IMG/VR virus record: IMGVR_UViG_3300028275_000006
Span: 1-64,000 of that record
Length of the DNA: 64,000 nucleotides
Strand: one strand, 5' to 3'
The position numbers and the translations under genes were made by a program. Under the pieces are notes generated by a model. That model was not told the origin of the DNA. It was given only the letters and a program-made list of their open reading frames with translations, and did not search any database. Positions 34,760 through 54,622 of this stretch are shown piece after piece; positions within the stretch are counted from its first letter, which is position 1; every line of letters begins with the position of its first letter.

Positions 34760-34789
34760 TTATGCTCCGTTTCTTTACTGTATGTTTAT

Positions 34790-34818
34790 ATTATACAGTC
34801 ACTTCTATACTTTGTCAA
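34790..34818 (-). promoter_or_regulatory. sigma70-type promoter
   Basis: TTGACA-N17-TATAAT, perfect consensus. Confidence 0.85.
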
Positions 34819-34821
34819 GGT

Positions 34822-34845
34822 TAGAGGTGCATCTCTGCACCTCTA
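34822..34845. terminator. 10-bp hairpin downstream of the AAA ATPase gene
   Basis: TAGAGGTGCA/TGCACCTCTA stem; loop reads GAGA (GNRA) on minus; the T-tract follows only on the plus strand. Confidence 0.45.
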
Positions 34846-34851
34846 TTTTGG

Positions 34852-35952: not shown

Positions 35953-36001
35953 TACATGCTCCTGTGTTAAAAATGATTGCAATTAATTTCGCAGTATCAT
36001 T

Positions 36002-38503: not shown

Positions 38504-38952
38504 GAAACCTCAGACTTGCCTTCGGCAATCTTTTTAACATTAATAAATCCAGCACCTCTATCTGACATATCGATGCCCTCTTCGCTGGCTACATTTTTGC
38601 ATAGTTCTCTAAACCAACGATCCACAATTTCTTCATCAGGATCGCCATCAAATCCATAACCCGCTTGTTTTAATTGTACTACAAATTCATCGTTCCAGTC
38701 AATCTCGAAGAAACCATTCTTTAAGTTATCTTTATTGACATGTGTCTCCAAAACAGCGACCCAAGGTTCTCCTTTGGCTGTAGCACGGTCTTTTGGAGTC
38801 ATTTTAGCCAATTCTTCTTCGCGTTTGGCTACTGCTTCTTTGGCTGTTGCTTCTTCAGCACGGGCAAGTGCTTCTGCACGTTCTTTTTCTAGACGTTCTT
38901 TTTCTGCTTCTAATTTGTCTATGCCAAATAATTTTTTAATAATTGCTTTCAT
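38500..38952 (-). CDS. hypothetical protein with an N-terminal coiled coil
   Basis: Start moved to MKAIIKK after GGGGGA; acidic C-terminal domain. Confidence 0.65.
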   Translation of the reverse strand: MKAIIKKLFGIDKLEAEKERLEKERAEALARAEEATAKEAVAKREEELAKMTPKDRATAKGEPWVAVLETHVNKDNLKNGFFEIDWNDEFVVQLKQAGYGFDGDPDEEIVDRWFRELCKNVASEEGIDMSDRGAGFINVKKIAEGKSEVS

Positions 38953-39619
38953 GTTTCCCCCATACCCGCGATTGCGGATAAAAAAATGCGTTTTCGTTTT
39001 GCCCCATATCCCAAATAATACTGCCCATTGTATTTCTTTCATTTAGTGGCAACGATTGAATAAAAGTATTTGTACTATAACGAACACCTTTAGTTATTGG
39101 TTTAACTTCGTGTACCCAAAGAGGATCTGCTGGAAAAATCATAGCATCTCCTTTATTCAATTTAACTTCGTATCTGCCATTCCAAAAAGTAAATTCGCCA
39201 CCTTCATAGTCGTCATTTAATGAAATAGTACAACTGGCGTGAATCATTTCCTCCCAATCCACATGAGGATGTATCCATTCGCCGACTTCGTATTTCATAA
39301 GTCGGTGCATGTGGGAAAATCTTAAAGATTTTTTTAATGCTGTAGTGTGAAACGCTTTAAACTCTTCTAGATATGTTATCCAATCTTCGATAATTTTATT
39401 TGTATGATTATGTACTACTAAAAAGTTTTCTGTATCAGGAATTAACTCTACTCTTTTAAAAGTAGAAGTAGTCATTTTATTAGTTACGGCGTGTATGCAA
39501 CTTTCTTGAACCGCACTGGCAGAACGCAATTCGTATTCGTCAATTAACGAATTGCATTGGTCTTCTGTTAATGCGTTTCTAACAACAAAAATTAAATCGG
39601 ATAACTTTATATCTTCCAT
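38936..39619 (-). CDS. 2OG-Fe(II) oxygenase (prolyl-4-hydroxylase-like)
   Basis: HxD (HPHVD), LNDDYEGGEF, distal H (WVHEVKP) and R (GVRYS). Confidence 0.88.
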   Translation of the reverse strand: MEDIKLSDLIFVVRNALTEDQCNSLIDEYELRSASAVQESCIHAVTNKMTTSTFKRVELIPDTENFLVVHNHTNKIIEDWITYLEEFKAFHTTALKKSLRFSHMHRLMKYEVGEWIHPHVDWEEMIHASCTISLNDDYEGGEFTFWNGRYEVKLNKGDAMIFPADPLWVHEVKPITKGVRYSTNTFIQSLPLNERNTMGSIIWDMGQNENAFFYPQSRVWGKHESNY

Positions 39620-40483
39620 TTATGTTCCCCACTCATTTTTAAAGAGTGGAACTTGTAATCTATCGCTGTAGCGTAAACCGTTTTTCATTGCTAGTTCCGC
39701 TACACGCCTGTTGTTAAGAGTATAGACACTTTCAACGCCACCCACGGGCATAAGATATATAGGACCGGTAAAACCATTTTCTCTATAAATGTCAGCAGTT
39801 TCAATTGCTTCCTCCGCATCTTCTTCTGTGGCCACTACAAATTTAAGATATGTATGACCGTATTCTTCGTATTCACAAACTACGTCTGGACGAATTGCTT
39901 CGTGACGTTCTTCACCGGAGCAACTTAATTTAGCACTAACACTAAATGTAACTTCTCGCCAAAAATCTTTATCGCTGTGATATTTCCATGTGTGCAGATA
40001 TTGCTTGAACTCGTCGGTGAGTTTTTGAGTACCATTCGTTTCAAATGTAATCTCTTTTAAGTTTGTCATTTTTGGATGGTCGAGCAAGTCTGGATACGCT
40101 CGTTGCCATCCAAGCAAAGGTTCCCCTCCGGTAATGACCAAGTGTTCGTCTCGCCATTCGTTGAAGGGTAGAATCTCTGCGATCCTGTCTGCGATGGCGT
40201 CTGAAGTGAGCATTGGACTAAGATCCTTAAAGCGAGGATCCCAACTAGCATAACTATCACAGCCCGTAGATACCAAAGGAAGTTCTTCATATTTTTTATA
40301 TGGGGTTCGTTCATGTTGGATTGCAATATCTTCAACTTCTGTACTTAGTTCACCTTTTGGTAATCCAAAGCCAGCACATTTAAAGTTACAACCAAATGTT
40401 CTCAAGAAAACAGACGGTACACCCATGTAACGTCCTTCGCCTTGAATACTATAAAATAATTCTGCAATTTTTAATTTGCTCAT
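39620..40483 (-). CDS. queE: 7-carboxy-7-deazaguanine synthase (radical SAM)
   Basis: ELFYSIQGEG, VFLRTFGCN, VITGGEP, ETNGT, RLQVPL; the Cys motif is split by an insertion. Confidence 0.9.
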   Translation of the reverse strand: MSKLKIAELFYSIQGEGRYMGVPSVFLRTFGCNFKCAGFGLPKGELSTEVEDIAIQHERTPYKKYEELPLVSTGCDSYASWDPRFKDLSPMLTSDAIADRIAEILPFNEWRDEHLVITGGEPLLGWQRAYPDLLDHPKMTNLKEITFETNGTQKLTDEFKQYLHTWKYHSDKDFWREVTFSVSAKLSCSGEERHEAIRPDVVCEYEEYGHTYLKFVVATEEDAEEAIETADIYRENGFTGPIYLMPVGGVESVYTLNNRRVAELAMKNGLRYSDRLQVPLFKNEWGT

Positions 40484-41261: not shown

Positions 41262-41473
41262 TTGCATGTCTCCAACCATTTATCAAGAATATTTACAGCA
41301 TCATTGAAATCGATACCATATACTTCTGCACTGATAACATTGTCTTTGATTTGTATATCAAACGGAACAGTTCCGTTAAATCGAAAATCTTCGGGAACAT
41401 CTGTCTCTACAATATACTTGTGTAGATTTTTTGCTCTATTAATTAAATTAGTCGCCATGTCTACTGAATTCAT
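41258..41473 (-). CDS. hypothetical protein
   Basis: 71 aa, overlaps the folE stop codon. Confidence 0.55.
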   Translation of the reverse strand: MNSVDMATNLINRAKNLHKYIVETDVPEDFRFNGTVPFDIQIKDNVISAEVYGIDFNDAVNILDKWLETCK

Positions 41474-42168
41474 CTTGGTGCAAACTCCTGTTGTAGTTTA
41501 ATGTTATCAAAGAACTCTTTCTTTGTACCAGCATCGTCTTTGAACGCACCTTTAAGTACAGTAGTTTGAGTTAATGAACTATGTGCCATAATGCCACGAT
41601 TCTCACAGCATCCATGAACTGCCTGAATATAAACGCCAATATCACTTGCGCCAGTGGCCTTTTCAATTTCTCTGGCTATGTCGTTACACAATTCTTCCTG
41701 TAAGGTACCACGACGAGCGCACCATTGCGCGATTCGTGTGTATTTTGACAGCCCAATGAGTTTTTGGGCGGCGATGATTCCGATGTAGGCAACACCAGAA
41801 ACAGGCTGATGATGATGACTACACATACTACGAAGCTCACTCCTAACCACCAACATACCCTCATAACGATCTTCGCTATCGTTAGGAAACGCTGTTGCAT
41901 CTGGTGCTGGTTCATATCTTCCTGCCATTATTTCGTTAAAGTACATTTTTGCTAATCGTTTCGCTGTACCGTGCGAGTTAGGATCTGTCTCTCTGTCAAT
42001 AAGAAGTTTGTCTAAAACACTTTCAAATGCCTCAGTTGCTTCTTTGATTAGTTGTTCTTTGACTAGATCAGATTCGATGTATTCGCTGATGTTATCTCCT
42101 GCCCAGAATCTTTTTCCGTCTAGGACCATCTTTTCGCGAATCGCTTGTGCTAAATTTTTTTCTGACAT
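41470..42168 (-). CDS. folE: GTP cyclohydrolase I
   Basis: SMCSHH, GLSKYTRI, QEELC, HGCCENRGI. Confidence 0.95.
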   Translation of the reverse strand: MSEKNLAQAIREKMVLDGKRFWAGDNISEYIESDLVKEQLIKEATEAFESVLDKLLIDRETDPNSHGTAKRLAKMYFNEIMAGRYEPAPDATAFPNDSEDRYEGMLVVRSELRSMCSHHHQPVSGVAYIGIIAAQKLIGLSKYTRIAQWCARRGTLQEELCNDIAREIEKATGASDIGVYIQAVHGCCENRGIMAHSSLTQTTVLKGAFKDDAGTKKEFFDNIKLQQEFAPR

Positions 42169-42804: not shown

Positions 42805-43168
42805 TTTTATAATTTCCTTTACTTGGTATAACGTGACGAACCCCGCCACGAGGGTCTTCCATATCACCCTTGCGTCTAGGGATCATGTGTATATGAGGAT
42901 ACATTACTGTTTGGCCAGCAGTCTCGCCACAGTTTTGTCCGACATTAAAAGCGTCCCAACGTTCAGATTGGACACCATCGAACCCGAACTTGTATGCTCC
43001 TTTGAAACATTCGACGATGTTGGTAAAACGTTCATAGGTTGGCACAAAAAGCAAATGTCCTTCCGTAACTGGGTAGGCATCGTTGAAGACCCAATAGTCT
43101 TTTGTTCTGTACTCGATACTAGTCCATGGTGCTCTGCGTTCATCTAGTGCCCTTTCTAAATCAGTCAT
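42785..43168 (-). CDS. HIT-family nucleotide hydrolase
   Basis: DAYPVTEGHLLFVP; GETAGQTVMYPHIHMIPRR.GD. Confidence 0.88.
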   Translation of the reverse strand: MTDLERALDERRAPWTSIEYRTKDYWVFNDAYPVTEGHLLFVPTYERFTNIVECFKGAYKFGFDGVQSERWDAFNVGQNCGETAGQTVMYPHIHMIPRRKGDMEDPRGGVRHVIPSKGNYKNASKST

Positions 43169-43716
43169 AACCAAAATTCTTCCCAAGGATAAACAAGCCA
43201 ACAATCTTCTTGTCGCTTGTCTACGGTCCAAACATGATAGTCTGGATCTTTAAACTCACTGCCGTAATTATGTGTTAATACAGCAAAACGAACATTGTCT
43301 CCCCATACTTGATTCCATGCTTCATCGTTAGGAAAACAACCACTGGGCCAATCTTTCTTAATCCAATTAAGAGTAGATCCTTGATCGTTAATATCGTCTA
43401 CAATTAAGATTTTCTTTTTAAGACGTTCTAAATGTTTGTGATCGCCCCAAATGTGCCTTTCGTCATTGGGAACAACTCCCAAGGCATCTTCGGCCATCCA
43501 AAGATTACTTTCGCAATCGTTTTTATTATCGCGAAGGCTGACATTAAGTGTGTGCATCTTAATGCCAGTATATTGACTTAGTAAGTTAGCCGGAACAAGA
43601 CCACCGCGTGTAATACCTACAATATAGTCAGGCCTCCAATTATGTTCAGACATTTGGCGAGCAATTTCTAAACATGCGCCTTCAACTTGTGACCAACTGT
43701 AGTATACTTTCTTCAT
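43165..43716 (-). CDS. type I phosphoribosyltransferase (purine/Gpt-like)
   Basis: IVGITRGGLVPA, PRPP-binding ILIVDDINDQGST, WLVYPWE. Confidence 0.88.
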   Translation of the reverse strand: MKKVYYSWSQVEGACLEIARQMSEHNWRPDYIVGITRGGLVPANLLSQYTGIKMHTLNVSLRDNKNDCESNLWMAEDALGVVPNDERHIWGDHKHLERLKKKILIVDDINDQGSTLNWIKKDWPSGCFPNDEAWNQVWGDNVRFAVLTHNYGSEFKDPDYHVWTVDKRQEDCWLVYPWEEFWL

Positions 43717-43949
43717 GCAGTTAACCCATAGGCCAATGATTGACATTCTTCTTTAGTCATAAAGAAATTATAAGTTTGTGTACCAACAACTTCACCGTCT
43801 TTAAGACTTTCTTGAACCATATCGATACTAAACAAACCTTTAGGGCTTAGTACTTCGTGTTTCTTTAATGTTAGCCTAAAACCGGCGTGTTCTTTGACAA
43901 CCATTTCTTTATAAGTATCTCTAACTGATTCATGTAGTTCCATCATCAT
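43713..43949 (-). CDS. hypothetical protein
   Basis: 78 aa, coupled to the PRTase start. Confidence 0.55.
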   Translation of the reverse strand: MMMELHESVRDTYKEMVVKEHAGFRLTLKKHEVLSPKGLFSIDMVQESLKDGEVVGTQTYNFFMTKEECQSLAYGLTA

Positions 43950-44382: not shown

Positions 44383-44800
44383 TTGGTATCCATTTATTAT
44401 TAACGAGAAATCCCCATTCTCTCTTTTGCGGACCTGGCATAAAAAGTGTCCAACACTCTACGTTGGGATCAATTTCAATTCTATGAAAACTGTTGGCACT
44501 ACAAATTCTAAAGTGTCCAGGCTTTCTCCATTTGGCAATTTCACAGACCTTTACTCCCTGGCTGTTAAATTGAGGAATCCATTCCCAATAGCCACCTTTT
44601 AGAATAAGTGTGGCATAAGGCCATGGGTGATCATGCACATCATCTGGATCACCTTTATGAAACTTGTGTAAGAATACATTAAATGGAAACCATTTACGAT
44701 CCTTTAAAAATAGATAATAACGTGTAAGTAACGGCTCGTCACAGGTACGATCCATAATAATACGCTTGCGACCGAGACGTTCTAACAGTTTTAATATCAT
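44345..44800 (-). CDS. cupin-fold protein
   Basis: HDHPWP...LKGGYWE and distal FHRIE: the H-x-H...E...H metal site. Confidence 0.75.
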   Translation of the reverse strand: MILKLLERLGRKRIIMDRTCDEPLLTRYYLFLKDRKWFPFNVFLHKFHKGDPDDVHDHPWPYATLILKGGYWEWIPQFNSQGVKVCEIAKWRKPGHFRICSANSFHRIEIDPNVECWTLFMPGPQKREWGFLVNNKWIPNELYLQSRKRNT

Positions 44801-45870
44801 ACAAGTCTTTCTAAGAGTCCATTTGCAGAAAAGAAATTTTCAGTTAAGTCTTGAGTTTGTTTTCTAAGTTGTGGTAAAAACTTTTCATAGTTATCCATAT
44901 ACTGGATAATCTTTGCACATATTTCTGGACGGTGTGCTTTATATGCTTCGAAACTTTCAGTCCATTCACTAGGATACTTAAAAGTATCATAGCCCATTTC
45001 ACTGTAACTAAGTCTATCTGGCACCATAGGAATAGCATCTACAACAGCGCCTTCATACCAACTAATCCCTAATGTCTCTTGTAAGTTTGCAGAGAACACT
45101 AATTTCGATTCGCCTAACAAGTTATGATATTCATTTTTTGTTAGTTGTTGATCCTGACAGACTACGAACTCGTACTGTGGCAAGTGTTCTTTTAAATCTC
45201 TAAAAATTTCAACTTGCTTCTCGGGTGCGATGCGATGAGGGAAAAGAATTAAATCACGTTTTTTCATCCCTTTATATGGAGTTAATGTATCTTCCATATA
45301 CTCCATTGGCCAACCTGTGCGTACAATTTTTCCTTTATCGATATATGATGCTTTTGCAGTATCGTAATCTATGTTTAAAAGATTATGACAAAACATTTCA
45401 ATATGGAATGTTGTAGCAAAGTAGTTATGATCTATAGCATGAAAGAAACTCTTTTCAGCATTTCTGACCCAAGGAGCATCGCCAATTAGACGACCTAAAA
45501 AGTCCTGTGGATCGTAACTACCGGCATGCCATAGTGCGTGAATAGTTACAGGAATCTGTAACAGTTCACTCATATACTTTAGGTTGATGATACCAGGGTG
45601 CCAAGCATCAGTAAAGATGAAGTGATCATTAGGAGCCACTGATCCGGCGCAAAACAACCTACCCATTTGCTCAACTTGAGCAGACTTGTATATATTGGTG
45701 CCACCAAAATTAAGAAAAGCACCAGGAGTAGTGGCTGAAGGAATATCCGTAGGCCCAGATAAAACTTGAACATCGTGTCCTCTCTTTCTCAGGATAGCCG
45801 GTAGGTGGGTCTTCCACTGCGCTGTATAGCGTGTTTCTACCGGCTCAAGGTCTACTAAGTAGACGGTCAT
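44797..45870 (-). CDS. GT-B glycosyltransferase (GT4-like)
   Basis: LFPHRIAPEK; EX7E motif ETLGISWYE; IPMVPDRLSYSE. Confidence 0.82.
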   Translation of the reverse strand: MTVYLVDLEPVETRYTAQWKTHLPAILRKRGHDVQVLSGPTDIPSATTPGAFLNFGGTNIYKSAQVEQMGRLFCAGSVAPNDHFIFTDAWHPGIINLKYMSELLQIPVTIHALWHAGSYDPQDFLGRLIGDAPWVRNAEKSFFHAIDHNYFATTFHIEMFCHNLLNIDYDTAKASYIDKGKIVRTGWPMEYMEDTLTPYKGMKKRDLILFPHRIAPEKQVEIFRDLKEHLPQYEFVVCQDQQLTKNEYHNLLGESKLVFSANLQETLGISWYEGAVVDAIPMVPDRLSYSEMGYDTFKYPSEWTESFEAYKAHRPEICAKIIQYMDNYEKFLPQLRKQTQDLTENFFSANGLLERLV

Positions 45871-46100
45871 TGGCGACCATTCCTGTAGTTGTTATTGTAC
45901 CCGTTGTTATTACGGGGACGATTTTCAAATCGTCTGTCGTTGTTATAACGACGAGGACGCTTAGACGCCTCGTAAGCCTGCCAAGTTTTACTTTGGCGGT
46001 TATACAAGTCTGCCTCATTGTAAGGCAGAAGGTTGAATCTGCAAAAATCTAGCAGATTGTCAAGATCGTCAAAAATTTGAACGACTTCTTTTTTCATCAT
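45867..46100 (-). CDS. small protein with an Arg/Asn-rich tail
   Basis: C-terminal RPRRYNNDRRFENRPRNNNGYNNNYRNGRQ. Confidence 0.6.
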   Translation of the reverse strand: MMKKEVVQIFDDLDNLLDFCRFNLLPYNEADLYNRQSKTWQAYEASKRPRRYNNDRRFENRPRNNNGYNNNYRNGRQ

Positions 46101-46108
46101 TGTTTCCT

Positions 46109-46504
46109 TTAGTATTTGATGAATGAACCATTTTCTCCGTCTTCGGAGACCTCAATCCAAATCTCGCGATTTGGATACTTCTTGCTAATGATGTCATGTA
46201 ATTCGTCAGACATCATTTCACAACTCTTGTAGTCAAGGCTTATAGTGGCACCTTGACCATTATACAACGACTCGAGCCATCGTTTGAATTGGATGAATTC
46301 GATGTCCCTGTCATTGTGTTGCACACTGATCCACACCCTGAAATGAAAGATGTGGCGATGAGGGTGACCCAAAAACGATACGTCATATTCGTCTCCTGTT
46401 GCTAGATTAGGATCTGTTAGTGCCGCAGGATACTTATGGATACCTTCTTTGCGGAAAGTTACCCAGATCATTTTGTTTGGTCTAATGTCTTGTTTGATAA
46501 TCAT
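46109..46504 (-). CDS. dpdL: QueD-paralogous T-fold protein, DpdL-like
   Basis: LGHPHRHIF (LxxxHRHxF in place of QueD CxxxHGH), SCEMMS, VSEDGENG; start at MIIKQ (ATGA overlap). Confidence 0.65.
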   Translation of the reverse strand: MIIKQDIRPNKMIWVTFRKEGIHKYPAALTDPNLATGDEYDVSFLGHPHRHIFHFRVWISVQHNDRDIEFIQFKRWLESLYNGQGATISLDYKSCEMMSDELHDIISKKYPNREIWIEVSEDGENGSFIKY

Positions 46505-47040
46505 GTTGGTGTATCTTGAGTGTACAAATCCCAATGAGTATACTTGTCTTTAGTCATTAGGCTTTGTAAATGATGTGTCCACACACCTGGATTTGTAGCA
46601 CCCCAAGTTCGGTCATCCAGTTTGAGTGTGGCATTGTAGTTGAGTTGATTAATGTAGGGTAACTTGACACTAATCATAGGTACAAACTTGGGATATTCGT
46701 TATAAGCAGACTCTAGTACGCCTTCGATGTGTTCAACACCAAAGTCTAGAGCTACCCAATAGCCTGCTTTTAGACAGCCTATAATAACTTCGTCCCATGC
46801 TTTGTATTCTTCGTGTGAAATACTTTTAGGATTAAAACTTTGACTAGTGCCAAAGTAAATTTGTTTAATGCGTTTGTTTTCGTCTAAGTATGCTTGTGTG
46901 TCACCAGCAATACGTAGTATTTCTTCTAGCGGAGGAGTGCCTACTACAAATAGTGTATACATACCATAGCAAATAGTATGTTCGACTTCGTAGCCTGTAA
47001 AGTAGACAATGTCTTGTCTTTCTTCAGTGTTTAATCCCAT
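46501..47040 (-). CDS. uncharacterised alpha/beta protein inside the deazaguanine cluster
   Basis: 179 aa; TLFVVG, IYFG, LKLDD...ATNPGVW; no family recognised. Confidence 0.7.
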   Translation of the reverse strand: MGLNTEERQDIVYFTGYEVEHTICYGMYTLFVVGTPPLEEILRIAGDTQAYLDENKRIKQIYFGTSQSFNPKSISHEEYKAWDEVIIGCLKAGYWVALDFGVEHIEGVLESAYNEYPKFVPMISVKLPYINQLNYNATLKLDDRTWGATNPGVWTHHLQSLMTKDKYTHWDLYTQDTPT

Positions 47041-47921
47041 TTAATATAACCTCTGCTATAACCATTTGGACGATCCACACCATCCGCAAATGCTTGTTGC
47101 CATTCTGTGTTACGATTATAACCTTTTGTCCAGAAAGAATCAACCTCTAGTTTACCGTTTTCAATCATCCAACGTGCTTCAAACATAGCACCAATAAATT
47201 CTTCTGTTCTTGGACTTGGTTTAACTGTAGTAACAGCCTTCCAAAGTTGTTGTTGTGCTTCTTCTTTACTTACTGCTTTACCAACAGCATCAATGATTAC
47301 TGCATTGTTATTTAGATTAATGTCGGTACCTAGTTGATATTTTCCAGATAAATCTACTATCAAATCGTAACTGTCGGTAGTACCTAACAGTAACGCATCT
47401 CCCCAAAGTTCCTGATTACTAGAACCTAGTACATCTACTTCAAGTTCTGGAAAATGATGTGCCAGGTTATTAAAAACTACCCATGCAAGGAAACCACTAC
47501 CTAGGATTAAGCATTTACCATTTTGTCTACGTTCAAAAAGAGTATACGCTTGTCTAATACAGTTAACACCACAGGCCACTGGTTCTAAAATGTAACGTGG
47601 ATGTAGTTCTAAAACTGTTACAAACTCACCGTCACGACAGTTGTAATAATCTGCGTATGCTGGTTCGCCGCGGGTAGCAACATAATCGCCTACTTTAACA
47701 CCTAATACACTGGCACCGACTTTAGTTACGATTCCTAGACCTTCGTGACCTTGCATGTGTAGTGGTAAAGGTCCAAAGTTGCCCTGCATCATATCTATGT
47801 CACTGCGACATACACCAGTCATAACTGCTTTAACTTCAATTTCAGTTGACGTAGGTTCTGGCTTTGCATATTCTACTTCTTCAAAGTAACCTTGTCCAGT
47901 TGTTTGTAGACAGCGTGTCAT
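47031..47921 (-). CDS. zinc-dependent medium-chain dehydrogenase (MDR)
   Basis: GVCRSD, GHEGLG, EPVACG, LILGSG; structural-zinc Cys lobe absent. Confidence 0.88.
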   Translation of the reverse strand: MTRCLQTTGQGYFEEVEYAKPEPTSTEIEVKAVMTGVCRSDIDMMQGNFGPLPLHMQGHEGLGIVTKVGASVLGVKVGDYVATRGEPAYADYYNCRDGEFVTVLELHPRYILEPVACGVNCIRQAYTLFERRQNGKCLILGSGFLAWVVFNNLAHHFPELEVDVLGSSNQELWGDALLLGTTDSYDLIVDLSGKYQLGTDINLNNNAVIIDAVGKAVSKEEAQQQLWKAVTTVKPSPRTEEFIGAMFEARWMIENGKLEVDSFWTKGYNRNTEWQQAFADGVDRPNGYSRGYIKWD

Positions 47922-48796
47922 AGTTTTTCTATTCTTTCGTGTATCCAAAGGTCAATTTCTAACTGTACTTTCCAGTACTCGTCATTATTTAGGTTTTCTA
48001 CAGCATCTTTAATCATATTTAGGTACGCTTCTTCTGGACACCAGCCTAACTCAAATACATCTTTGGTATTATCTTGATTAATAAATGTAATAGCACTACG
48101 TTCAACAGTCATACTGCGCCAGTTAGCACGGCAGTTCCATTTAGAACCAAATCCAATGTGACACTGGTCGTCTACATCATAAGTTCCATTTGGGTTTACA
48201 GTACCATACTCTGTGCTTTCGATATCTTTTAACAGCCATGATTGTATAGATGATTCGCCGTTAACTTTTTCTATGCGCCAGTCTGGATGTAGTGCAATAT
48301 ACAAACTTAATAAGTGTGGCATTAAGTCCCTACTAACTCCGCCAAATGCTAGTTTGCGTGTAGTAAACCAACTACCTGGGCTAGGAATACAGTTCTTTCT
48401 AATCCATTCGATGTCTACATTCTTTGCTACTTTAGCCTTTTCCTGTAATTCTGCAATATTGTCACGCCACATATTATTTTTAACCATCATAAATCGTGTG
48501 CGTGGAAATCTTTTACATAATTTAGCCCATTCGTTTCTATTAATCAGTCCAGGCTTTTCAATAAAGACAATTTTACTGATAGGAGCCAGTTTAACGGCTA
48601 ATTCTAAATGCGTAAAATTTGGTGTGCAAATATGTACGGTGTCAAAAGACCCGTGAAGTAATATGGCTGGTTCTATACTAGGGAAGTCGGCATTTTTATT
48701 AATGTCTGTATCGACAGTACAAACTTCATAACCTAATTGAGTTAGGACAGATTTATATAACTGTCCTATTCCCATTCCTACAACTAAACTTTTCAT
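47918..48796 (-). CDS. Gfo/Idh/MocA-family oxidoreductase
   Basis: VVGMGIG, ICTPNFTH, FIEKPG, GGVSRDLMPH. Confidence 0.85.
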   Translation of the reverse strand: MKSLVVGMGIGQLYKSVLTQLGYEVCTVDTDINKNADFPSIEPAILLHGSFDTVHICTPNFTHLELAVKLAPISKIVFIEKPGLINRNEWAKLCKRFPRTRFMMVKNNMWRDNIAELQEKAKVAKNVDIEWIRKNCIPSPGSWFTTRKLAFGGVSRDLMPHLLSLYIALHPDWRIEKVNGESSIQSWLLKDIESTEYGTVNPNGTYDVDDQCHIGFGSKWNCRANWRSMTVERSAITFINQDNTKDVFELGWCPEEAYLNMIKDAVENLNNDEYWKVQLEIDLWIHERIEKL

Positions 48797-49050
48797 CTAT
48801 ATGTTGGTAGTTCGTTAACACATTTAATAAGAGATCCGGATTGTTTGCCCGCTAATTGATGTAGCGCATAATCCGGAGAGGATACACAGGCTTCGTGCCC
48901 ATTGAATTTATCTGCTAGGGCAATGGTGTTGCCAGTTTCTGCAAATTTAATTACAAGATAGTAGTCGTTTGGACCCACGGCATCTGCCGTTTTATAAAAC
49001 AAACCAAAACTTAATACTGCTAAAACACCAATGCCTAGTAGTTTTTTCAT
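48793..49050 (-). CDS. small exported protein
   Basis: Signal peptide MKKLLGIGVLAVLSFG..ADA; two Cys. Confidence 0.6.
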   Translation of the reverse strand: MKKLLGIGVLAVLSFGLFYKTADAVGPNDYYLVIKFAETGNTIALADKFNGHEACVSSPDYALHQLAGKQSGSLIKCVNELPTYR

Positions 49051-50594
49051 TTTACGCCTTCTTCGAGTTCGTCAAGTTTAGCAATTTCATCATCGGTAAA
49101 TTCTTCACCGTGCTCTAATTGTACACTCTCTTCCTCTACTTCGTCAAACAGTTTGGCAAATTGTGTACTTGCGTTTACAGTCTTCTTACCTACTGCTCCG
49201 CGAGTTCCAATAATACTTTGCCAAAATTTATTATACTCTTCAACGACTTTGTCTGCTTCTGCACGACTACTAGTAGCAAAAATGGCTTCTACTACATCTT
49301 TAAAGAATAGTCTATCAAACCGTTCTTCTACTAACATAGCAGGAACAATGCCCAAATCGTATTGACGATTGGCTTCTTGTACAGCATTAATGTGCATCCA
49401 AACATTATGGCCCATTAAGATAGCGTAACTAAAACTATCCCACGAAGTTTTACCTTCCTTGCCAATCTTGTTTAGATCCCCGGGCCCGTAAATACAAACA
49501 TCTTTAATTTGAACCCCGTCAATAATTGGACTATTGTCAAAGTTTTTAAAATGTCCGTCCTGTACTACTGCATCGCGGAATAGTCTAGTATCTTTACTAT
49601 ATTTTTTATTATCGATACTAGGTAACATTCTATATACCCACTTAGTTCTGTCTTGTGTTTCTGTTTGAACGTATACTTGTCCGTTTGCAGTTGCTAAGAA
49701 TGGACTAGCACAGTCGAAACTAATTGTAAAGTTAGGATTGTGATACTTGCGTACAGCACGTTGAATGTCTGTTAATAAACAAGCCCACTCTAATTTACTA
49801 GTACCTAAGAAGTGCATCCAGTCTTGTTTGCCCTGTTCAAGTAATCCGTCAAATCGTAATGCTACTAGGCGTTTTAATACCAAGTGTACATCACACATAT
49901 TCTGACCACCCATGGCCCAACCGTTAAATGCACGGTCACCGTAGACAGTAGGATCGCAGTACTTCTTCATTCGGTCATACCAATCGTCTGCATCGGTATG
50001 ATTTTCACCTTGGAGAACGTTTAAGAATTTACAATTACCATTGCGATTGTTTACAAACCAATCGTTGTTAATGTAAGTACCTTGAACTGCTTCTGCGTAT
50101 GTAGTAATGCCTGTGGCTTTTTGTCCAGCAGGGCTACGAGCTACCCAAGCAGGGATATCAAGACACATACCATAGTCCATTAGACTATCCATCCACTTAA
50201 GAACCTGTTCACGTTTCTTTTGTGCTTTAGGACAGTTGGGATTCTTCCAATCGCCTTCCCATACACCTTTACCAATTTGGAAACCACCGGAGTCGCCTAG
50301 TACCCAACTAGTACTGCGATCTCTATTACGAAACATATCTTCGCTGTGATCAACTTTGTTAAGGTCTAGATTAGCATGACCTGCACTATACAAGCAGTGG
50401 TCATAGTAGAACGCACCTTTTTCCGGTTCTAAGTAGTTTAGACTTTCTACTCCGTTTTTAAAACTAGCAGGAACTCTTGCCGGATCAACATAGTTTCCAT
50501 ATCTTTGTTTACCTATAAAGGTACTATAGAAACCGCTAGTTGCCGGCAAAAAGTATGCGTAGTCGTTTTGTGTTGCGGTTAAATTTTTATTCAT
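49047..50594 (-). CDS. dpdA: TGT-fold guanine transglycosylase, DpdA-like (7-deazaguanine insertion)
   Basis: TGT barrel motifs in order: LGDSGGFQ, CLDIP, NVLQG, WAMGG, MHFLG, SFDCASP; no CxCxxC zinc site of tRNA TGTs. Confidence 0.82.
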   Translation of the reverse strand: MNKNLTATQNDYAYFLPATSGFYSTFIGKQRYGNYVDPARVPASFKNGVESLNYLEPEKGAFYYDHCLYSAGHANLDLNKVDHSEDMFRNRDRSTSWVLGDSGGFQIGKGVWEGDWKNPNCPKAQKKREQVLKWMDSLMDYGMCLDIPAWVARSPAGQKATGITTYAEAVQGTYINNDWFVNNRNGNCKFLNVLQGENHTDADDWYDRMKKYCDPTVYGDRAFNGWAMGGQNMCDVHLVLKRLVALRFDGLLEQGKQDWMHFLGTSKLEWACLLTDIQRAVRKYHNPNFTISFDCASPFLATANGQVYVQTETQDRTKWVYRMLPSIDNKKYSKDTRLFRDAVVQDGHFKNFDNSPIIDGVQIKDVCIYGPGDLNKIGKEGKTSWDSFSYAILMGHNVWMHINAVQEANRQYDLGIVPAMLVEERFDRLFFKDVVEAIFATSSRAEADKVVEEYNKFWQSIIGTRGAVGKKTVNASTQFAKLFDEVEEESVQLEHGEEFTDDEIAKLDELEEGVK

Positions 50595-51163: not shown

Positions 51164-51898
51164 TTATTTGCTCTGTGCTGGCAAGATGTAATCATATACA
51201 GCAACACCGCTGTCAACAGTAATCTGCATAGCACCTGCATCTGCAATCTTCATAGTAATATTACCATCGAGATTTAAAATGCTTTGTACTTGTGCAACAG
51301 GCCATGACCATGTGTGCTTTAACTTGCCGCCAACATCGTGTTGGAATACAAAAGAACCTGCGTGTGTACTTGCATCACCGAAGAAGAATACAAGATTGTT
51401 ATCTTCTGTACGAACTTGGAAAACAGTTTCTTCACTGTGTGCCGCACTTTGTAACTTCAAACGACCAATTGCCGCCATGCTTGGTTCAAACTCAACTTCC
51501 CATGTTGCACCTTTGAACTTAACAGATTTTAGTTTTTCGTTAATAAGTTCTGATGCCATGAAACGATAATCGTTTTGGAAGTCACCTGCTTGGTTTTCAA
51601 AGTGCAAACCTACTGGAACTGTGTTGCCGTTACGTTCCGCAGTAACTACATCGATCTTTGCGTTTTCTTTATACTCTGGATTCTTCAAGTGAAGATTTAA
51701 CTTGTCCAAGTTTGGCATACCAAATGTGCCATCAAACTCTGATACTGGCTTGTGTGCAGTAGCAGTAACAATAACGCTACGATCCTCTGCCATTGATTCG
51801 ATAGTTGTGCTATCTTTAGCACCTGTAATTTTTACCAAAGGCAAAAAGCCTAGGCTATGTGTATGTGCTACGATGTCGGTTAGAATATCTTTAATCAT
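51164..51898 (-). CDS. DNA polymerase sliding clamp (gp45-like)
   Basis: 244 aa with a two-domain beta pattern; FGMPNLDKL resembles gp45 FAIYDL; lies just downstream of the polymerase. Confidence 0.6.
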   Translation of the reverse strand: MIKDILTDIVAHTHSLGFLPLVKITGAKDSTTIESMAEDRSVIVTATAHKPVSEFDGTFGMPNLDKLNLHLKNPEYKENAKIDVVTAERNGNTVPVGLHFENQAGDFQNDYRFMASELINEKLKSVKFKGATWEVEFEPSMAAIGRLKLQSAAHSEETVFQVRTEDNNLVFFFGDASTHAGSFVFQHDVGGKLKHTWSWPVAQVQSILNLDGNITMKIADAGAMQITVDSGVAVYDYILPAQSK

Positions 51899-51919: not shown

Positions 51920-51948
51920 ATTATATTTAGGTTTTTGGTCAAAGTCAA
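51920..51948 (-). promoter_or_regulatory. sigma70-type promoter heading the clamp-dpdA-GT operon
   Basis: TTGACT-N17-TATAAT followed by an AAGGAG SD. Confidence 0.85.
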
Positions 51949-51952
51949 GTCT

Positions 51953-54622
51953 TTAAAACTCAAACAGTTGATTAAATGTGTTCTTTTCTTCTGTGGATTT
52001 AATATCCCAGTTAAGAACTCCAATTAAGTTTTCTAGTTTGTTATCTATAATAGTTTGTTCCATTTCTGCATCGTCGAATGGAAGTTCCATAAACCATTTA
52101 GGCAAACGTAGTTCGTCTACAGGATATGCTACCGATGTGTACCCTAGCGGATTTGCTTTGAGTTTACATACAATAACTTTTTGGCCGTCTGTGACCTGCA
52201 TACTATACTTGTCCGAATTCATTCGACGCAGAGTATTCCAATTAATACTTGCACGAACGTGTCCAGGCATATTAGCCTTGCCCTGTTTCTTTTCTTTGGC
52301 TTCGTACTCAGTAATGTTGTTGGCTCGCTTAGGAGAACCTTTCTCCCAACCAGGACGGGCCTTAAACTCTGTACGGAATTGAGTAATGTGATCTAATACT
52401 TGTTCTTCTGTAGCACCAGTTAGAACTTTCTCAAGTACATCACTTAAAAAGTCTTGAATAAATGCAGGAGTATCACTGCGCTTCAAGTCTAAGCCCATGG
52501 CCTTGATCTTGCCTGGTTTACCATCTACGTCTGCACGTTTGCCTTCTTTATCATAGTAAAGTACAGCATAACGTTTCTTAGTAATAAACAATCCTTTACT
52601 AGCAACAATTTCTCGACCTGCTCGAATAACATCACCACGACTTGGCGGGCAATGAAATGCCTGCTCCATAAACTTAACGAATGTACTGTTTACTTCCTCG
52701 CCAATTTGGTCATAGAGTGCAGTAACGTTTTCCTTAGTCCAAGGAATAACTCCAGATTCGATGTCTTTCTTTAATGTAGTATATGCACTGAAATAACAAG
52801 AGTCTGTATCACCATAGATAACTGCCTTACCTACGTGATTGTATTCACCTGTGATAATTTCATTTACTTTACTAGCCATGTGTTTGGCAATTTGTCTACC
52901 GACTAGAGTAGTTGACTGTCCAATACGTTTATCGAAGAATCTACAACCTGGGTTAAGAATAGCACCATACAAACTGTTCAAGTTAATCTTTTTAACTAAC
53001 TGACGTTTATCCCAATACTCTTCTTCGACCTTGTTACCTGCCTGAATACATTCTTTTAATTTGGCCTGCATTTCTTTACGTTCAGCATACCAACGCTTTA
53101 ACAGTCCAGGAATAATACCTTCCTTTTCGTAGGTAAAGATTGTACCATTTGCCGAAAGCATCCAAGGCTGATGACTATCAAAAATAACTTTATATACTTC
53201 TGCACCACTGTGTACAGTACTGTTGCCATCTTCCCAGTCTATGGTAATTTCCACATCTTTACGTTGTGCCATAACTGCTTCGTATTCGTCAGTTCCAAAC
53301 TTGCCTTCCCAACTGCCTGCAAACGATTTCTTTTTAAGAGTCATTTGTTCATGGATAAATGCTTCTGTCATTGTAGGACGTAATTGACCTACAATAGTTT
53401 CCGGACCCATGTTAAGCGCACGAATGGCGCTTGGATAAAGACTGTTAATATCCAGCGATCCAATCCAATCTTGCAGACCTTCTTTCGGATGTGCTACATA
53501 AGCACCAGCAGCCGCAGTATTTTCATCGTCATCTCGTTTAGGACGATTAGGAACTTGGAAACCTCTACGATGCGCTTCGTTAATAATAGCCTGTTCGGTA
53601 ACAGCCACAGCACCCATTGTAGTCTGTAATAATACAGTATTTTCATGTGCAATTTTATTAGCAAGGTCAATGAATTTAAGTTTTTCATCTAGTTTGTTTA
53701 ATAGTGCAACGTCTTGTCTGTTATACACAATAAATCTTTTAAAGTCATTGTTGTATAGTTGATCAAGTGTGCCTTCGTAAACAGTTTTGTTCTCGCCAAT
53801 TTCCATTTCACCGATGGCATCTAATCGATAGGTGTGTCGTTCTTCGTAGGTAAACTTGCGATAAAGTTCTAGACTGTCTAAGTGTACACGACCAATTAAG
53901 TCATATGTTTGTGCAGTCTTGCCATACTTTTCATATTCTCTACGTTTAGGAAATTGATTCCATAGACAGAAACGTCTTGTATCTTCTTTACTTAACACCT
54001 GTGTCACACGGTTAACAGTATAAGGAATATCATAGCCTTCGCTGTTCCAACCTGTGATAATGTCTGCATCTTGAATTAAATCTAAGAATGTTTCCAACAT
54101 ATCTGCTTCATTAGTAAACAGATGTGTATCTGGAATATCGGCTACTAACGCTTCGGCTTCAGCAAAGGTTAATGTCTTTGGAGGAAGAGCCAGTGTAATT
54201 AATTTGTCTAACCATTTTAGGTGAACTGTGATAGCAGTAATTGGCATAAACGCATCTTCAGGAGTGCTATAGCCGCGTTCTGGATCGAAGTCCACCTCAA
54301 TGTCGAAGAAGCAAATATTTAGATTAGGTGCATCTTGATTTAGATAGTTTTCGCTTAGATGTACAAAAATTGGATTGATGTCGCTTTCGTATAAGTCCTT
54401 ACCACTGTTAATGGCTAATTCTTTTCGAAAGTCTTTGGTGTTTTTACAAACTACCCTAGTCAGCGGATCGCCGTAAATGCTAGTAAACTTGCCTTTTTGA
54501 TCCGGATAGTAAAACGTGTAGCGTACAGGATGTTCTTTGAAAACCCGTTCGCCTTGGTCGTTTCGCTCTACGACCTTAATAATATCATTCTCTCTGTCAA
54601 AGAGAGCGTCAACGTAACTCAT
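51953..54622 (-). CDS. gp43: family B DNA polymerase (gp43-like)
   Basis: ExoI FFDIE, ExoII WNSEGYD, ExoIII YNRQD; DINSLYPS, KINLNSLYG, YGDTDS. Confidence 0.97.
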   Translation of the reverse strand: MSYVDALFDRENDIIKVVERNDQGERVFKEHPVRYTFYYPDQKGKFTSIYGDPLTRVVCKNTKDFRKELAINSGKDLYESDINPIFVHLSENYLNQDAPNLNICFFDIEVDFDPERGYSTPEDAFMPITAITVHLKWLDKLITLALPPKTLTFAEAEALVADIPDTHLFTNEADMLETFLDLIQDADIITGWNSEGYDIPYTVNRVTQVLSKEDTRRFCLWNQFPKRREYEKYGKTAQTYDLIGRVHLDSLELYRKFTYEERHTYRLDAIGEMEIGENKTVYEGTLDQLYNNDFKRFIVYNRQDVALLNKLDEKLKFIDLANKIAHENTVLLQTTMGAVAVTEQAIINEAHRRGFQVPNRPKRDDDENTAAAGAYVAHPKEGLQDWIGSLDINSLYPSAIRALNMGPETIVGQLRPTMTEAFIHEQMTLKKKSFAGSWEGKFGTDEYEAVMAQRKDVEITIDWEDGNSTVHSGAEVYKVIFDSHQPWMLSANGTIFTYEKEGIIPGLLKRWYAERKEMQAKLKECIQAGNKVEEEYWDKRQLVKKINLNSLYGAILNPGCRFFDKRIGQSTTLVGRQIAKHMASKVNEIITGEYNHVGKAVIYGDTDSCYFSAYTTLKKDIESGVIPWTKENVTALYDQIGEEVNSTFVKFMEQAFHCPPSRGDVIRAGREIVASKGLFITKKRYAVLYYDKEGKRADVDGKPGKIKAMGLDLKRSDTPAFIQDFLSDVLEKVLTGATEEQVLDHITQFRTEFKARPGWEKGSPKRANNITEYEAKEKKQGKANMPGHVRASINWNTLRRMNSDKYSMQVTDGQKVIVCKLKANPLGYTSVAYPVDELRLPKWFMELPFDDAEMEQTIIDNKLENLIGVLNWDIKSTEEKNTFNQLFEF

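What the first reader, a model, noticed from the sequence alone, without database searches (positions are those of the whole stretch)
47031..48796. Coupled MDR and Gfo/Idh/MocA oxidoreductase pair between dpdA and dpdL
Seen: two translationally coupled NAD(P)-dependent enzymes. The MDR keeps its catalytic zinc residues (GVCRSD, GHE) but lacks the four-Cys structural lobe. Established: both families act on sugars and cyclitols, often as oxidation/reduction pairs that epimerise a sugar. Inference: they either build an unusual sugar donor for the GT, or reduce the C7 substituent of the base to a hydroxymethyl acceptor. Such a pair is unusual inside a phage DNA-modification locus.
Basis: partly seen in the sequence, partly recalled or inferred. 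Interest (0 to 1): 0.65.

Follow-up and report, generated by a model that had tools for sequence, protein, structure and literature searches.

The report
Sugar-type oxidoreductase pair in deazaguanine cluster
Two real, intact NAD-type dehydrogenase genes sit inside a phage operon that replaces guanine in DNA with a 7-deazaguanine, always next to a glycosyltransferase, which suggests a still-unknown sugar-bearing guanine modification; what the two enzymes act on has not been shown.

Summary
Window 47918-48796 (-) encodes a 292-aa Gfo/Idh/MocA enzyme with GxGxxG, EKP and DxxxH motifs. Window 47031-47921 (-) encodes a 296-aa zinc-type MDR with Cys38/His59/Glu60/Glu113 and no four-Cys lobe. The two genes overlap by ATGA.

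They lie in one overlapping gene string: DpdA-like transglycosylase, g85, Gfo, MDR, g179, DpdL, g77, GT4 glycosyltransferase. FolE and QueE lie downstream, QueD is elsewhere in the genome, and there is no QueC.

In 80 IMG/VR loci found with the MDR, wherever the flank was long enough:
- Gfo was present in 78/78.
- DpdA was present in 76/76.
- DpdL and the GT were each present in 52/52.

One distant contig (L090) packs QueD-QueE-FolE-DpdL-Gfo-GT-MDR-GT-DpdA into a single operon. Pseudomonas phage PA5oct keeps Gfo-MDR-g179 about 25 kb from its DpdA-GT-DpdL, with the catalytic motifs lost. Many DpdL+GT phages, such as ACP17 and Phosso, lack the pair, so it is an accessory.

The nearest solved relatives of the Gfo enzyme are glycoside 3-dehydrogenases (DgpA).

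Best reading: a sugar-tailoring redox module of a glycosylated 7-deazaguanine pathway. The substrate is unproven.

The parts
49047..50594 (-). DpdA-like DNA-guanine transglycosylase (515 aa), TGT superfamily by motifs only
   Evidence: DSGGFQ is invariant, and FDCASPF..A.G is conserved, in 12 homologues. It is 33% identical to PA5oct EST35_0316, which sits in the same position after PolB and g244. No Pfam TGT hit. Not similar to phiST DpdA3.
48793..49050 (-). g85, small protein with a signal-peptide-like N-terminus; found only in the closest relatives
   Evidence: ATGA overlaps on both sides.
47918..48796 (-). Gfo/Idh/MocA-family NAD-dependent oxidoreductase (292 aa)
   Evidence: PF01408, E 1.9e-5. 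Family profile against DgpA 7xr9, E 5e-11. GxGxxG, Asp29, EKP and Asp157-x3-His161 are each conserved in 55-58 of 58 sequences.
47031..47921 (-). Zinc-type medium-chain dehydrogenase/reductase (296 aa), polyol/threonine-dehydrogenase-like, without the structural zinc lobe
   Evidence: PF08240, E 5.5e-12. Family profile against TDH 2d8a, E 7e-13. Cys38, His59, Glu60, Glu113 and GSGF are conserved. The ATG at 47921 overlaps the Gfo stop.
46501..47040 (-). g179, conserved protein of unknown function; a core companion of DpdL and the GT rather than of the pair
   Evidence: No family hit. 455 clusters at 50% identity. AF2 model pLDDT 93.7. Only weak resemblance to partial barrels and QueE. A homologue lies next to DpdA in ACP17 and next to the GT and DpdL in L016/L017.
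46109..46504 (-). DpdL (T-fold, QueD-like; proposed 7-carboxy-7-deazaguanine decarboxylase); start revised to the ATG at 46504
   Evidence: LxxxHRHxF signature (PMC10516641). phrog_17812. 57% identical to ACP17 DpdL and 34% to phiST DpdL. ATGA overlap with g179.
45867..46100 (-). g77, small conserved protein between DpdL and the GT
44797..45870 (-). GT-B / GT4-like glycosyltransferase (357 aa)
   Evidence: AF2 model pLDDT 89.8. Foldseek finds retaining GT4 enzymes at E 4e-10 to 1e-7, probability 1.0. Adjacent to DpdL in ACP17, Phosso, PA5oct and BUCT-ZZ01.
43165..43746 (-). Phosphoribosyltransferase-domain protein
   Evidence: PF00156, E 2.2e-13. Present in most related loci.
41470..42168 (-). 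FolE, GTP cyclohydrolase I
   Evidence: PF01227, E 1.4e-38.
39620..40483 (-). QueE-like radical SAM 7-carboxy-7-deazaguanine synthase
   Evidence: NCBIfam QueE models, E 3e-13; Radical_SAM.
51920..51948 (-). Strong sigma-70-like promoter match (TTGACT-17-TATAAT) ahead of g244 and the gene string
   Evidence: This is a consensus match only.

Best explanation
The two genes encode an accessory redox module of a 7-deazaguanine DNA-hypermodification pathway that also contains a GT4 glycosyltransferase.

The core pathway is inferred from the gene content:
- FolE, QueD and QueE make 7-carboxy-7-deazaguanine.
- DpdL converts it, by proposed decarboxylation.
- The DpdA-like transglycosylase exchanges it for guanine in DNA.
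- The GT adds a sugar. The acceptor is not known.

In the phages that carry the pair, the proposed steps are these. The Gfo/Idh/MocA enzyme uses NAD+ to oxidise a secondary hydroxyl of that sugar, most likely C3 as in glycoside 3-dehydrogenases. The zinc MDR then acts as a ketoreductase or as a second secondary-alcohol dehydrogenase. The net result would be an epimerised or keto sugar. This could happen on the nucleotide-sugar donor or, as I slightly favour, on the sugar already attached to its aglycone.

Shown: the gene structure, the family membership, intact catalytic motifs and strict co-occurrence with dpdA, dpdL and the GT. Inferred: the sugar substrate, the position attacked, the order of the steps and the existence of the glycosylated base.
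For: 1. Operon: the string from DpdA to g151 is joined by ATGA overlaps.

2. Co-occurrence in 80 IMG/VR loci with MDR identity 36-100%: Gfo in 78/78, DpdA in 76/76, DpdL and the GT each in 52/52, wherever the flank allows.

3. Three different arrangements keep the association.
- The window clade.
- L090, with QueD-QueE-FolE-DpdL-Gfo-GT4-MDR-GT-DpdA.
- PA5oct, where the pair is about 25 kb away in the same genome.

4. Nested distribution in cultured phages: every phage with the pair has the GT, and every phage with the GT has DpdL.

5. Catalytic residues are conserved across the family.

6. The Gfo profile hits DgpA best (E 5e-11), then levoglucosan dehydrogenase, glucuronide 3-dehydrogenase, WbpB and inositol dehydrogenases. 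The MDR is closest to threonine and polyol dehydrogenases.

7. The GT has a GT4 fold.

8. Sugar genes are recruited to the same spot in relatives.

9. PA5oct virion DNA resists enzymes in a way that points to modified G (PMC12191111).

10. No homologous pair outside this context was found in GTDB genomes.
Against: - No chemistry is known for any pair-bearing phage.
- Most loci belong to one syntenic clade, so the counts are not independent events.
- 7-deazaguanine itself offers no obvious O- or N-acceptor for a retaining GT4 enzyme.
- The similarity to DgpA is only about 20-25% identity and does not fix the substrate.
- The genome has a separate nucleotide-sugar cluster (SDR dehydratases, DegT aminotransferase, PIG-L deacetylase) that could supply the donor without the pair.
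- In PA5oct the Gfo homologue has lost GxGxxG and EKP, and the MDR homologue has lost the Cys and His zinc ligands. The proteins are nevertheless kept, which hints at a role that does not need redox catalysis.
- Contig L101 shows the pair with no dpd genes in 6.2 kb, though that contig may be a chimera.
Confidence: 0.5

Rival explanations
1. Donor synthesis only. The pair converts a common nucleotide sugar (for example UDP-glucose) by oxidation and reduction into an unusual NDP-sugar, which the GT then transfers.
For: Gfo/Idh/MocA enzymes such as WbpB act on UDP-sugars, and WbpB is among the PDB hits. A UDP-glucose/GDP-mannose-dehydrogenase-like gene lies just upstream of the cluster in 37/80 relatives. 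The pair is an add-on to a GT that exists without it.
Against: The best hits are dehydrogenases of glycosides and free sugars, not of NDP-sugars. No nucleotidyltransferase was found in the genome. A separate SDR/DegT sugar cluster already exists. MDR enzymes acting on NDP-sugars are rare, as far as I know.
Confidence: 0.2
2. Base side-chain reduction. The pair reduces a C7 carbonyl of the deazaguanine (formyl or carboxyl) to a hydroxymethyl group that the GT then glycosylates.
For: The zinc MDR resembles aldehyde and alcohol dehydrogenases. 7-deazaguanine lacks an acceptor, so some acceptor must be created.
Against: The GT and DpdL co-occur without the pair in six cultured phage lineages. No carboxylate-activating enzyme is present, and QueC is absent. 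DpdL is proposed to remove the carboxyl group altogether (PMC10516641). The Gfo enzyme's relatives act on sugars.
Confidence: 0.08
3. Pterin branch. FolE plus the PTPS-like DpdL make a 6-acyl-tetrahydropterin, the two dehydrogenases reduce its side chain as sepiapterin reductase does, and the GT makes a pterin glycoside. The module would then not act on DNA.
For: DpdL has the PTPS/QueD T-fold (PMC10516641). Tetrahydrobiopterin glucosyltransferases are among the GT's structural neighbours (5zes, E 1e-7).
Against: That GT match is no better than about 20 other GT4 enzymes. DpdL lacks the catalytic Cys of PTPS and QueD. The genes always accompany a DNA transglycosylase and QueE. Most DpdL+GT phages have no reductases.
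Confidence: 0.05
4. Unrelated passenger. The pair is an auxiliary metabolic or anti-defence function acting on a host sugar, cyclitol or signal molecule, and merely travels in this gene string.
For: In PA5oct it lies 25 kb from the dpd genes. Unrelated genes such as a SulP permease can be inserted at this spot. Synteny inherited within one clade inflates the co-occurrence counts.
Against: The compact L090 operon interleaves the pair with DpdL, two GTs and DpdA in a genome that lacks the PolB-g244 context. No occurrence without dpd genes was confirmed in IMG/VR, GTDB or the phage collection.
Confidence: 0.15

Closest known systems
DgpA, NAD-dependent C-glycoside 3-oxidoreductase of gut bacteria (PDB 7xr9/7xre), and related glycoside or sugar 3-dehydrogenases (levoglucosan dehydrogenase 6a3f, glucuronide 3-dehydrogenase 8tdi)
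   Same: Same Gfo/Idh/MocA family. The TPN..H, EKP and GG..D...H motifs align, and the family profile scores E 5e-11 over residues 49-239.
   Different: The phage protein is about 75 residues shorter, and identity is low. It has no DgpB/C-type lyase partner: g179 gives only insignificant xylose-isomerase-like hits. Its substrate is unknown, and its context is DNA modification rather than catabolism.
Polyol/threonine-dehydrogenase branch of zinc MDRs (L-threonine 3-dehydrogenase 2d8a/2dfv; sorbitol and xylitol dehydrogenases)
   Same: GroES-like domain with Cys-His-Glu catalytic zinc ligands plus the Glu of the EP motif, and a GxGxxA Rossmann motif.
   Different: It lacks the structural zinc lobe and is about 50 residues shorter. 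The cofactor domain is too divergent for Pfam ADH_zinc_N.
[quoted passage not shown] 2023, PMC10516641)
   Same: FolE, QueD and QueE without QueC. DpdL with the LxxxHRHxF signature. A transglycosylase next to DpdL.
   Different: phiST has no GT, no g179 and no oxidoreductases, and its DNA carries plain dDG. ACP17 has the GT and g179 but not the pair. The window's transglycosylase is not detectably related to phiST DpdA3.
Pseudomonas jumbo phage PA5oct, genes EST35_0362, 0363 and 0364
   Same: Homologues of Gfo, MDR and g179 (34, 38 and 41% identity) in the same order. The same genome has DpdA-GT-DpdL-QueE, and overall synteny with the window is shared.
   Different: The trio lies about 25 kb from the dpd genes. 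The Gfo homologue lacks GxGxxG and EKP. The MDR homologue has Ser and Cys in place of the Cys and His zinc ligands.
Glucosylation of hydroxymethylcytosine in T-even phages
   Same: A phage-encoded GT-B enzyme decorating a modified DNA base is the nearest functional analogy. This rests on my own knowledge and on the GT-B fold.
   Different: That system acts on a pyrimidine with a CH2OH acceptor and has no sugar-tailoring dehydrogenases. The T4 enzymes were not among the GT's top structural matches.

Membership tests
Gfo/Idh/MocA oxidoreductases | N-terminal Rossmann fold with GxGxxG and an acidic residue at the end of strand 2 | tested here: met
   GMGIGQ at residues 7-12 and Asp29. PF01408 scores 25.8 bits against a cut-off of 24. 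The glycines are conserved in 55-56 of 58 sequences and Asp29 in 57 of 58.
Gfo/Idh/MocA oxidoreductases | EKP motif and the catalytic Asp-x3-His (or Tyr) in the C-terminal domain | tested here: met
   E80-K81-P82, D157 and H161. They align with DgpA. D157 and H161 are invariant; EKP is invariant except in PA5oct.
Gfo/Idh/MocA oxidoreductases | C-terminal alpha/beta substrate domain recognised by a family model | tested here: inconclusive
   There is no Pfam C-terminal domain hit. However, the profile alignment to DgpA runs to residue 239. The structure was not modelled.
Zinc-dependent MDR (alcohol/polyol dehydrogenase) superfamily | GroES-like catalytic domain | tested here: met
   PF08240, E 5.5e-12. 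phrog_2640. More than 170 PDB MDR chains hit at E < 1e-4.
Zinc-dependent MDR (alcohol/polyol dehydrogenase) superfamily | Catalytic zinc ligands Cys, His and Glu | tested here: met
   Cys38, His59, Glu60 and Glu113. Cys38 and His59 are each conserved in 56 of 57 sequences, Glu60 in 57 of 57 and Glu113 in 56 of 57. Metal binding itself was not tested.
Zinc-dependent MDR (alcohol/polyol dehydrogenase) superfamily | Structural zinc lobe with four Cys (present in many but not all members) | tested here: not met
   Where TDH has CGKCYAC, the family has PAYADxY. Mammalian sorbitol dehydrogenases also lack the lobe (my own knowledge), so this does not exclude membership.
Zinc-dependent MDR (alcohol/polyol dehydrogenase) superfamily | Rossmann cofactor domain | tested here: inconclusive
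   The GSGFLA motif is invariant, and there is a weak second aligned stretch to the TDH C-terminal half. Pfam ADH_zinc_N gives no hit.
Phage 7-deazaguanine DNA modification cluster (Dpd type, dDG branch) | FolE, QueD and QueE present and QueC absent | tested here: met
Phage 7-deazaguanine DNA modification cluster (Dpd type, dDG branch) | DpdL with the LxxxHRHxF signature | tested here: met
   The motif is at 46109-46504. There is homology to ACP17 and phiST DpdL.
Phage 7-deazaguanine DNA modification cluster (Dpd type, dDG branch) | DpdA, a TGT-superfamily DNA transglycosylase | tested here: inconclusive
   The DSGGFQ and FDCxxP catalytic motifs are conserved. But Pfam TGT, a PDB profile, hhalign against phage 9g DpdA and an HMM against phiST DpdA3 all gave no significant match. 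The structure was not modelled.
Phage 7-deazaguanine DNA modification cluster (Dpd type, dDG branch) | Modified G actually present in virion DNA | not testable with these tools
   The only evidence is indirect and concerns a relative: PA5oct DNA resists G-containing restriction sites (PMC12191111).
Glycoside 3-dehydrogenases (DgpA-like) | Oxidation of the C3 hydroxyl of a glycosidically bound sugar | not testable with these tools
   DgpA is the best PDB relative, but identity is low. Substrate-binding residues were not compared.

The most novel reading that the evidence does not exclude
A widespread clade of large river, lake and marine phages, and probably ACP17-, Phosso- and PA5oct-like phages too, replaces guanine with a glycosylated 7-deazaguanine. 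That would be the first sugar-bearing purine in DNA. In the pair-bearing phages the sugar is further oxidised or epimerised on the DNA or base by a DgpA-like 3-dehydrogenase and a zinc ketoreductase. The GT and g179 would then be the 'unknown enzymes' whose absence explains why dpdA plus dpdL alone gave no product in E. coli (PMC10516641).
Probability: 0.3. Interest if true: 0.85.

Novelty: new variant of a known kind. Interest (0 to 1): 0.62.

Why it matters
Every 7-deazaguanine DNA modification described so far carries a small C7 group (H, COOH, CONH2, CN or an aminomethyl derivative). None of the known pathways involves a glycosyltransferase or a sugar dehydrogenase.

A conserved DpdA-g179-DpdL-GT4 core, with an optional Gfo/MDR module, points to a new and bulkier family of guanine hypermodifications. 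These genes are abundant in environmental phages: the word search listed about 2000 homologues of the Gfo protein.

Such bases would affect restriction, CRISPR and glycosylase-based defences, and they would affect nanopore base-calling of metagenomes. The idea can be tested directly, because ACP17, Phosso and PA5oct are cultured.

Tried and rejected
- Megablast of 8 kb against the phage collection found nothing.
- Pfam, NCBIfam and PHROGs gave nothing for g179, the DpdA-like protein or the GT.
- PDB profile searches for the GT and the DpdA-like protein were not significant.
- hhalign of the DpdA profile against phage 9g DpdA was not significant, apart from a 17-column stretch at the FDC motif.
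- HMMs of g179, DpdA and the GT did not match any phiST neighbour gene.
- Fold searches with g179 gave no clear relative:
  - Foldseek against the PDB.
  - VIA wide search, best Z 6.3.
  - ESM Atlas by shape.
  - Language-model search.

  QueE-like partial barrels recur at Z 5.5-5.9 and TM 0.48, which is within noise.
- Longer members of the g179 family carry no informative fused domain.
- The supplements of Cui et al. are not held, so I could not check which subfamily they assign to the ACP17 or PA5oct DpdA.
- The genome-contig scan returned only two phage-like MAG contigs plus generic MDR fragments.
- RNA-library contigs from four river metatranscriptomes cover the whole region without differences. 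Because they are contigs, and DNA carry-over is possible, this does not prove transcription.
- I did not run complex prediction, because I make no claim that the two enzymes bind each other.
- The hydroxymethyl-acceptor idea and the pterin-glycoside idea were considered and ranked low; see the rival explanations.
Full report
**What is in the sequence**

On the minus strand, 47918-48796 encodes a 292-aa protein and 47031-47921 a 296-aa protein. The longest-ORF start of the second gene is a TTG at 47948. However, an ATG at 47921 overlaps the stop of the first gene as ATGA, so the true product is 296 aa.

The first protein is a Gfo/Idh/MocA enzyme.
- It hits Pfam GFO_IDH_MocA at E 1.9e-5, just above the curated cut-off.
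- It carries GxGxxG (residues 7-12), Asp29, the EKP motif (80-82) and Asp157-x3-His161.

The second protein is a zinc-type MDR.
- It hits ADH_N at E 5.5e-12 and a PHROG annotated as the zinc alcohol dehydrogenase superfamily.
- It has Cys38 (in GVCRSD), His59-Glu60 (in GHE), Glu113 (in the EP motif) and a GSGFLA dinucleotide motif.
- The segment where threonine dehydrogenase has its four-Cys lobe has no cysteines.

**Surroundings**

All genes from the family-B DNA polymerase (51953-54622) downwards lie on the minus strand. The order is:
- g244 (51164-51898)
- two small genes
- a 515-aa protein (49047-50594)
- g85 (48793-49050)
- Gfo
- MDR
- g179 (46501-47040)
- a T-fold protein (46109-46504)
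- g77
- a 357-aa protein (44797-45870)

Further down lie a phosphoribosyltransferase, FolE and QueE.

The 515-aa protein has the two catalytic motifs of tRNA-guanine transglycosylases, DSGGFQ and FDCxxP. These are invariant or conserved among its homologues. No profile method available here linked it significantly to TGT or DpdA, so I call it DpdA-like on motifs and position alone.

The T-fold protein carries exactly the LxxxHRHxF signature that defines DpdL. It is 57% identical to the DpdL of phage ACP17 and 34% to that of phiST.

The 357-aa protein was modelled at pLDDT 89.8. It matches retaining GT4 glycosyltransferases (glycogen synthase, BshA, MshA, PglA) at E down to 4e-10.

The whole record is a 212.5-kb IMG/VR virus. 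It has QueD at 97.0-97.5 kb and no QueC. This is the gene set of the dDG branch described by Cui et al. (PMC10516641).

ATGA overlaps join DpdA/g85, g85/Gfo, Gfo/MDR, g179/DpdL, g77/GT and GT/g151. Translational coupling is therefore a property of the whole string, not of the pair alone.

**Distribution**

The word search found about 2000 homologues of the Gfo protein and 1500 of g179, nearly all of them unannotated metagenomic proteins.

Scanning IMG/VR with an MDR alignment gave 80 loci at 36-100% identity. I mapped the window's proteins onto them:
- Gfo was present in 78 of 78 loci with enough upstream sequence. It was adjacent in 72 and separated by one inserted gene in 6.
- The DpdA-like gene was present in 76 of 76.
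- g179 was present in 69 of 74.
- DpdL and the GT were each present in 52 of 52.

Most of these loci share the order PolB-g244-DpdA-Gfo-MDR-g179-DpdL-g77-GT. They are largely one clade and do not count as independent events.

Independent support comes from two other arrangements.
- L090, a 63-kb contig without the PolB-g244 context, has a single compact operon: QueD-QueE-FolE-DpdL-Gfo-GT4-MDR-GT-DpdA. The second glycosyltransferase (Glycos_transf_1, E 2e-10) sits between the two dehydrogenases.
- Pseudomonas jumbo phage PA5oct and ten relatives share distant synteny with the window. They have DpdA-GT-DpdL-QueE after the polymerase, and Gfo-MDR-g179 homologues about 25 kb away.

In GTDB genomes only two MAG contigs matched in full. 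One has the same cluster. The other (L101, 6.2 kb) has the pair, a truncated g179 and then bacterial-looking glycan genes; it may be a chimera.

The reverse does not hold. ACP17, Phosso, BUDD, X1, BCSR5 and BUCT-ZZ01 have DpdL and the GT, mostly adjacent, but not the pair. The Cellulophaga phages, whose DNA carries plain dDG, have DpdL without the GT. The distribution is therefore nested: phages with the pair are a subset of those with the GT, which are a subset of those with DpdL.

g179 belongs to the core rather than to the pair.
- ACP17 has a homologue directly before its DpdA.
- L016/L017 show GT-g179-DpdL.
- A related phage (L014/L015) pairs a g179 homologue with a DegT-like protein and a radical SAM/SPASM enzyme instead.

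**What the enzymes look like**

Across 57-58 distinct sequences the cofactor and catalytic residues of both proteins are essentially invariant. The striking exception is PA5oct.
- Its Gfo homologue has K-x-K-x-x-D in place of GxGxxG, Gln in place of Asp29 and DIN in place of EKP.
- Its MDR homologue has Ser and Cys in place of the Cys and His zinc ligands.

The family profile of the Gfo protein finds DgpA, a C-glycoside 3-oxidoreductase, as its best solved relative (E 5e-11, about 10 bits ahead of the next). Behind it come levoglucosan dehydrogenase, aldose-aldose and glucose-fructose oxidoreductases, inositol dehydrogenases, a glucuronide 3-dehydrogenase and WbpB. All of these oxidise a secondary hydroxyl of a sugar or cyclitol.

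The MDR profile is closest to threonine, xylitol and ketose dehydrogenases. Language-model neighbours outside viruses are glucose dehydrogenase and ribulose-5-phosphate reductase clusters, which is a lead only.

g179 folds confidently (pLDDT 93.7) into a small alpha/beta structure. It has no significant match. QueE-like partial barrels recur at noise level.

**Sugar context**

- In 37 of the 80 loci a UDP-glucose/GDP-mannose-dehydrogenase-like gene lies between the polymerase and g244.
- Radical SAM genes, a phosphoribosyltransferase, a SulP permease or a second GT are inserted in the cluster in some lineages.
- The window's own genome has, at 203-212 kb, a PIG-L deacetylase, two SDR epimerase/dehydratases, a DegT aminotransferase fragment and two radical SAM genes.
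- Homologues of the DegT and of one radical SAM gene lie next to g179 or inside the dpd cluster in other phages.

**Interpretation**

The pair is best read as an optional tailoring module of a DpdA-g179-DpdL-GT4 pathway, acting on the sugar part. The oxidation would be by the Gfo enzyme, most likely at C3. The reduction or a second oxidation would be by the zinc MDR. The result would be an epimer or a keto sugar.

I cannot decide whether this happens on the donor or after transfer. The glycoside-dehydrogenase affinities, and the separate nucleotide-sugar cluster elsewhere in the genome, tilt me slightly to the latter.

This is unlikely, because the GT and DpdL co-occur without the pair and no carboxylate-activating enzyme is present.

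A pterin-glycoside reading and an unrelated-passenger reading remain possible at low probability.

The weak points are these:
- No chemistry is known for any of these phages.
- It is unclear what acceptor a GT4 enzyme would find on 7-deazaguanine.
- The motifs have decayed in PA5oct.

PA5oct DNA does behave as G-modified in restriction tests (PMC12191111). Cui et al. obtained no dDG from dpdA plus dpdL of ACP17 in E. coli and suspected missing enzymes. The GT and g179 are obvious candidates for those.

**Other evidence**

Near-identical sequence occurs in many river metagenomes and in contigs of four river metatranscriptome libraries. This shows that the phage is common there, but it does not prove transcription.

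**Verdict**

This is a new variant of the 7-deazaguanine modification systems, built from new members of two well-known enzyme families. Its function is inferred from context only.

Noticed in passing
window 46501-47040 (-); also L012 6323-6721, L016 94-597, L014 3034-3600: g179 is a large uncharacterised family: 455 clusters at 50% identity, no Pfam or PHROG hit, and a confident fold without a clear relative. It travels with DpdL and the GT in ACP17 and other phages. In one lineage it travels with a DegT-like protein and a radical SAM/SPASM enzyme. It looks like a general component of phage DNA-modification modules.
   Followed up: partly
window 44797-45870 (-); L012 7989-9017; L011 8001-9092: A GT4-fold glycosyltransferase is adjacent to DpdL in many cultured phages (ACP17, Phosso, PA5oct, BUCT-ZZ01). 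The 2023 description of the dDG pathway does not mention it. It may be the missing enzyme that kept dpdA plus dpdL from working in E. coli.
   Followed up: partly
L001 9001-10769 (PA5oct EST35_0362/0363): The PA5oct-like homologues of the pair have lost the NAD-binding glycines and the EKP motif (Gfo), and the Cys and His zinc ligands (MDR). They are nevertheless conserved in all 11 PA5oct-like genomes, so they may be pseudo-enzymes or have a changed function.
   Followed up: partly
window 49047-50594 (-): The DpdA-like protein has the classical TGT motifs but is not detectably related to phiST DpdA3 or to Pfam TGT. Among cultured phages, homologues occur only in PA5oct-like phages, Phosso and one Vibrio jumbo phage. 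It may be a further DpdA subfamily.
   Followed up: partly
L059 8781-9995 (also L060, L061, L063, L064): A SulP-family sulfate permease gene (PF00916, E 1e-46) is inserted between the Gfo and MDR genes in one sub-lineage.
   Followed up: no
L004 6312-7085 and 36 other IMG/VR loci: A short (about 257 aa) UDP-glucose/GDP-mannose-dehydrogenase-like gene lies between the DNA polymerase and g244 in 37 of 80 related loci. It is absent from the window's genome.
   Followed up: partly
G000 203181-212005 (outside the window; L108): A nucleotide-sugar-type cluster: a PIG-L deacetylase, two SDR epimerase/dehydratases (one PseB/CapD-like), a DegT aminotransferase fragment and two radical SAM enzymes. Homologues of two of these genes sit next to the dpd or g179 genes in other phages.
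   Followed up: partly
window 9907-23991 (+): A single open reading frame of 4694 codons, among what look like structural genes.
   Followed up: no
window 38936-39619 (-): A 2OG-Fe(II) oxygenase gene lies directly downstream of QueE. It is detected in only a few related loci.
   Followed up: no
window 33581-35982 (-): A MoxR-type AAA ATPase next to a DUF2201 metallopeptidase/VWA protein. This pair is also conserved in PA5oct at 45-55% identity.
   Followed up: no
window 48793-49050 (-): g85 has a signal-peptide-like N-terminus and is wedged by ATGA overlaps between DpdA and Gfo. It is present only in the closest relatives.
   Followed up: no
L101 (MAG contig, 6202 bases): Here the pair is followed by a g179 homologue truncated at 75 aa, and then by an amylase-like gene and two GT2 genes of bacterial appearance, with no dpd genes. 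This is either an assembly chimera or a rare occurrence outside the cluster.
   Followed up: partly
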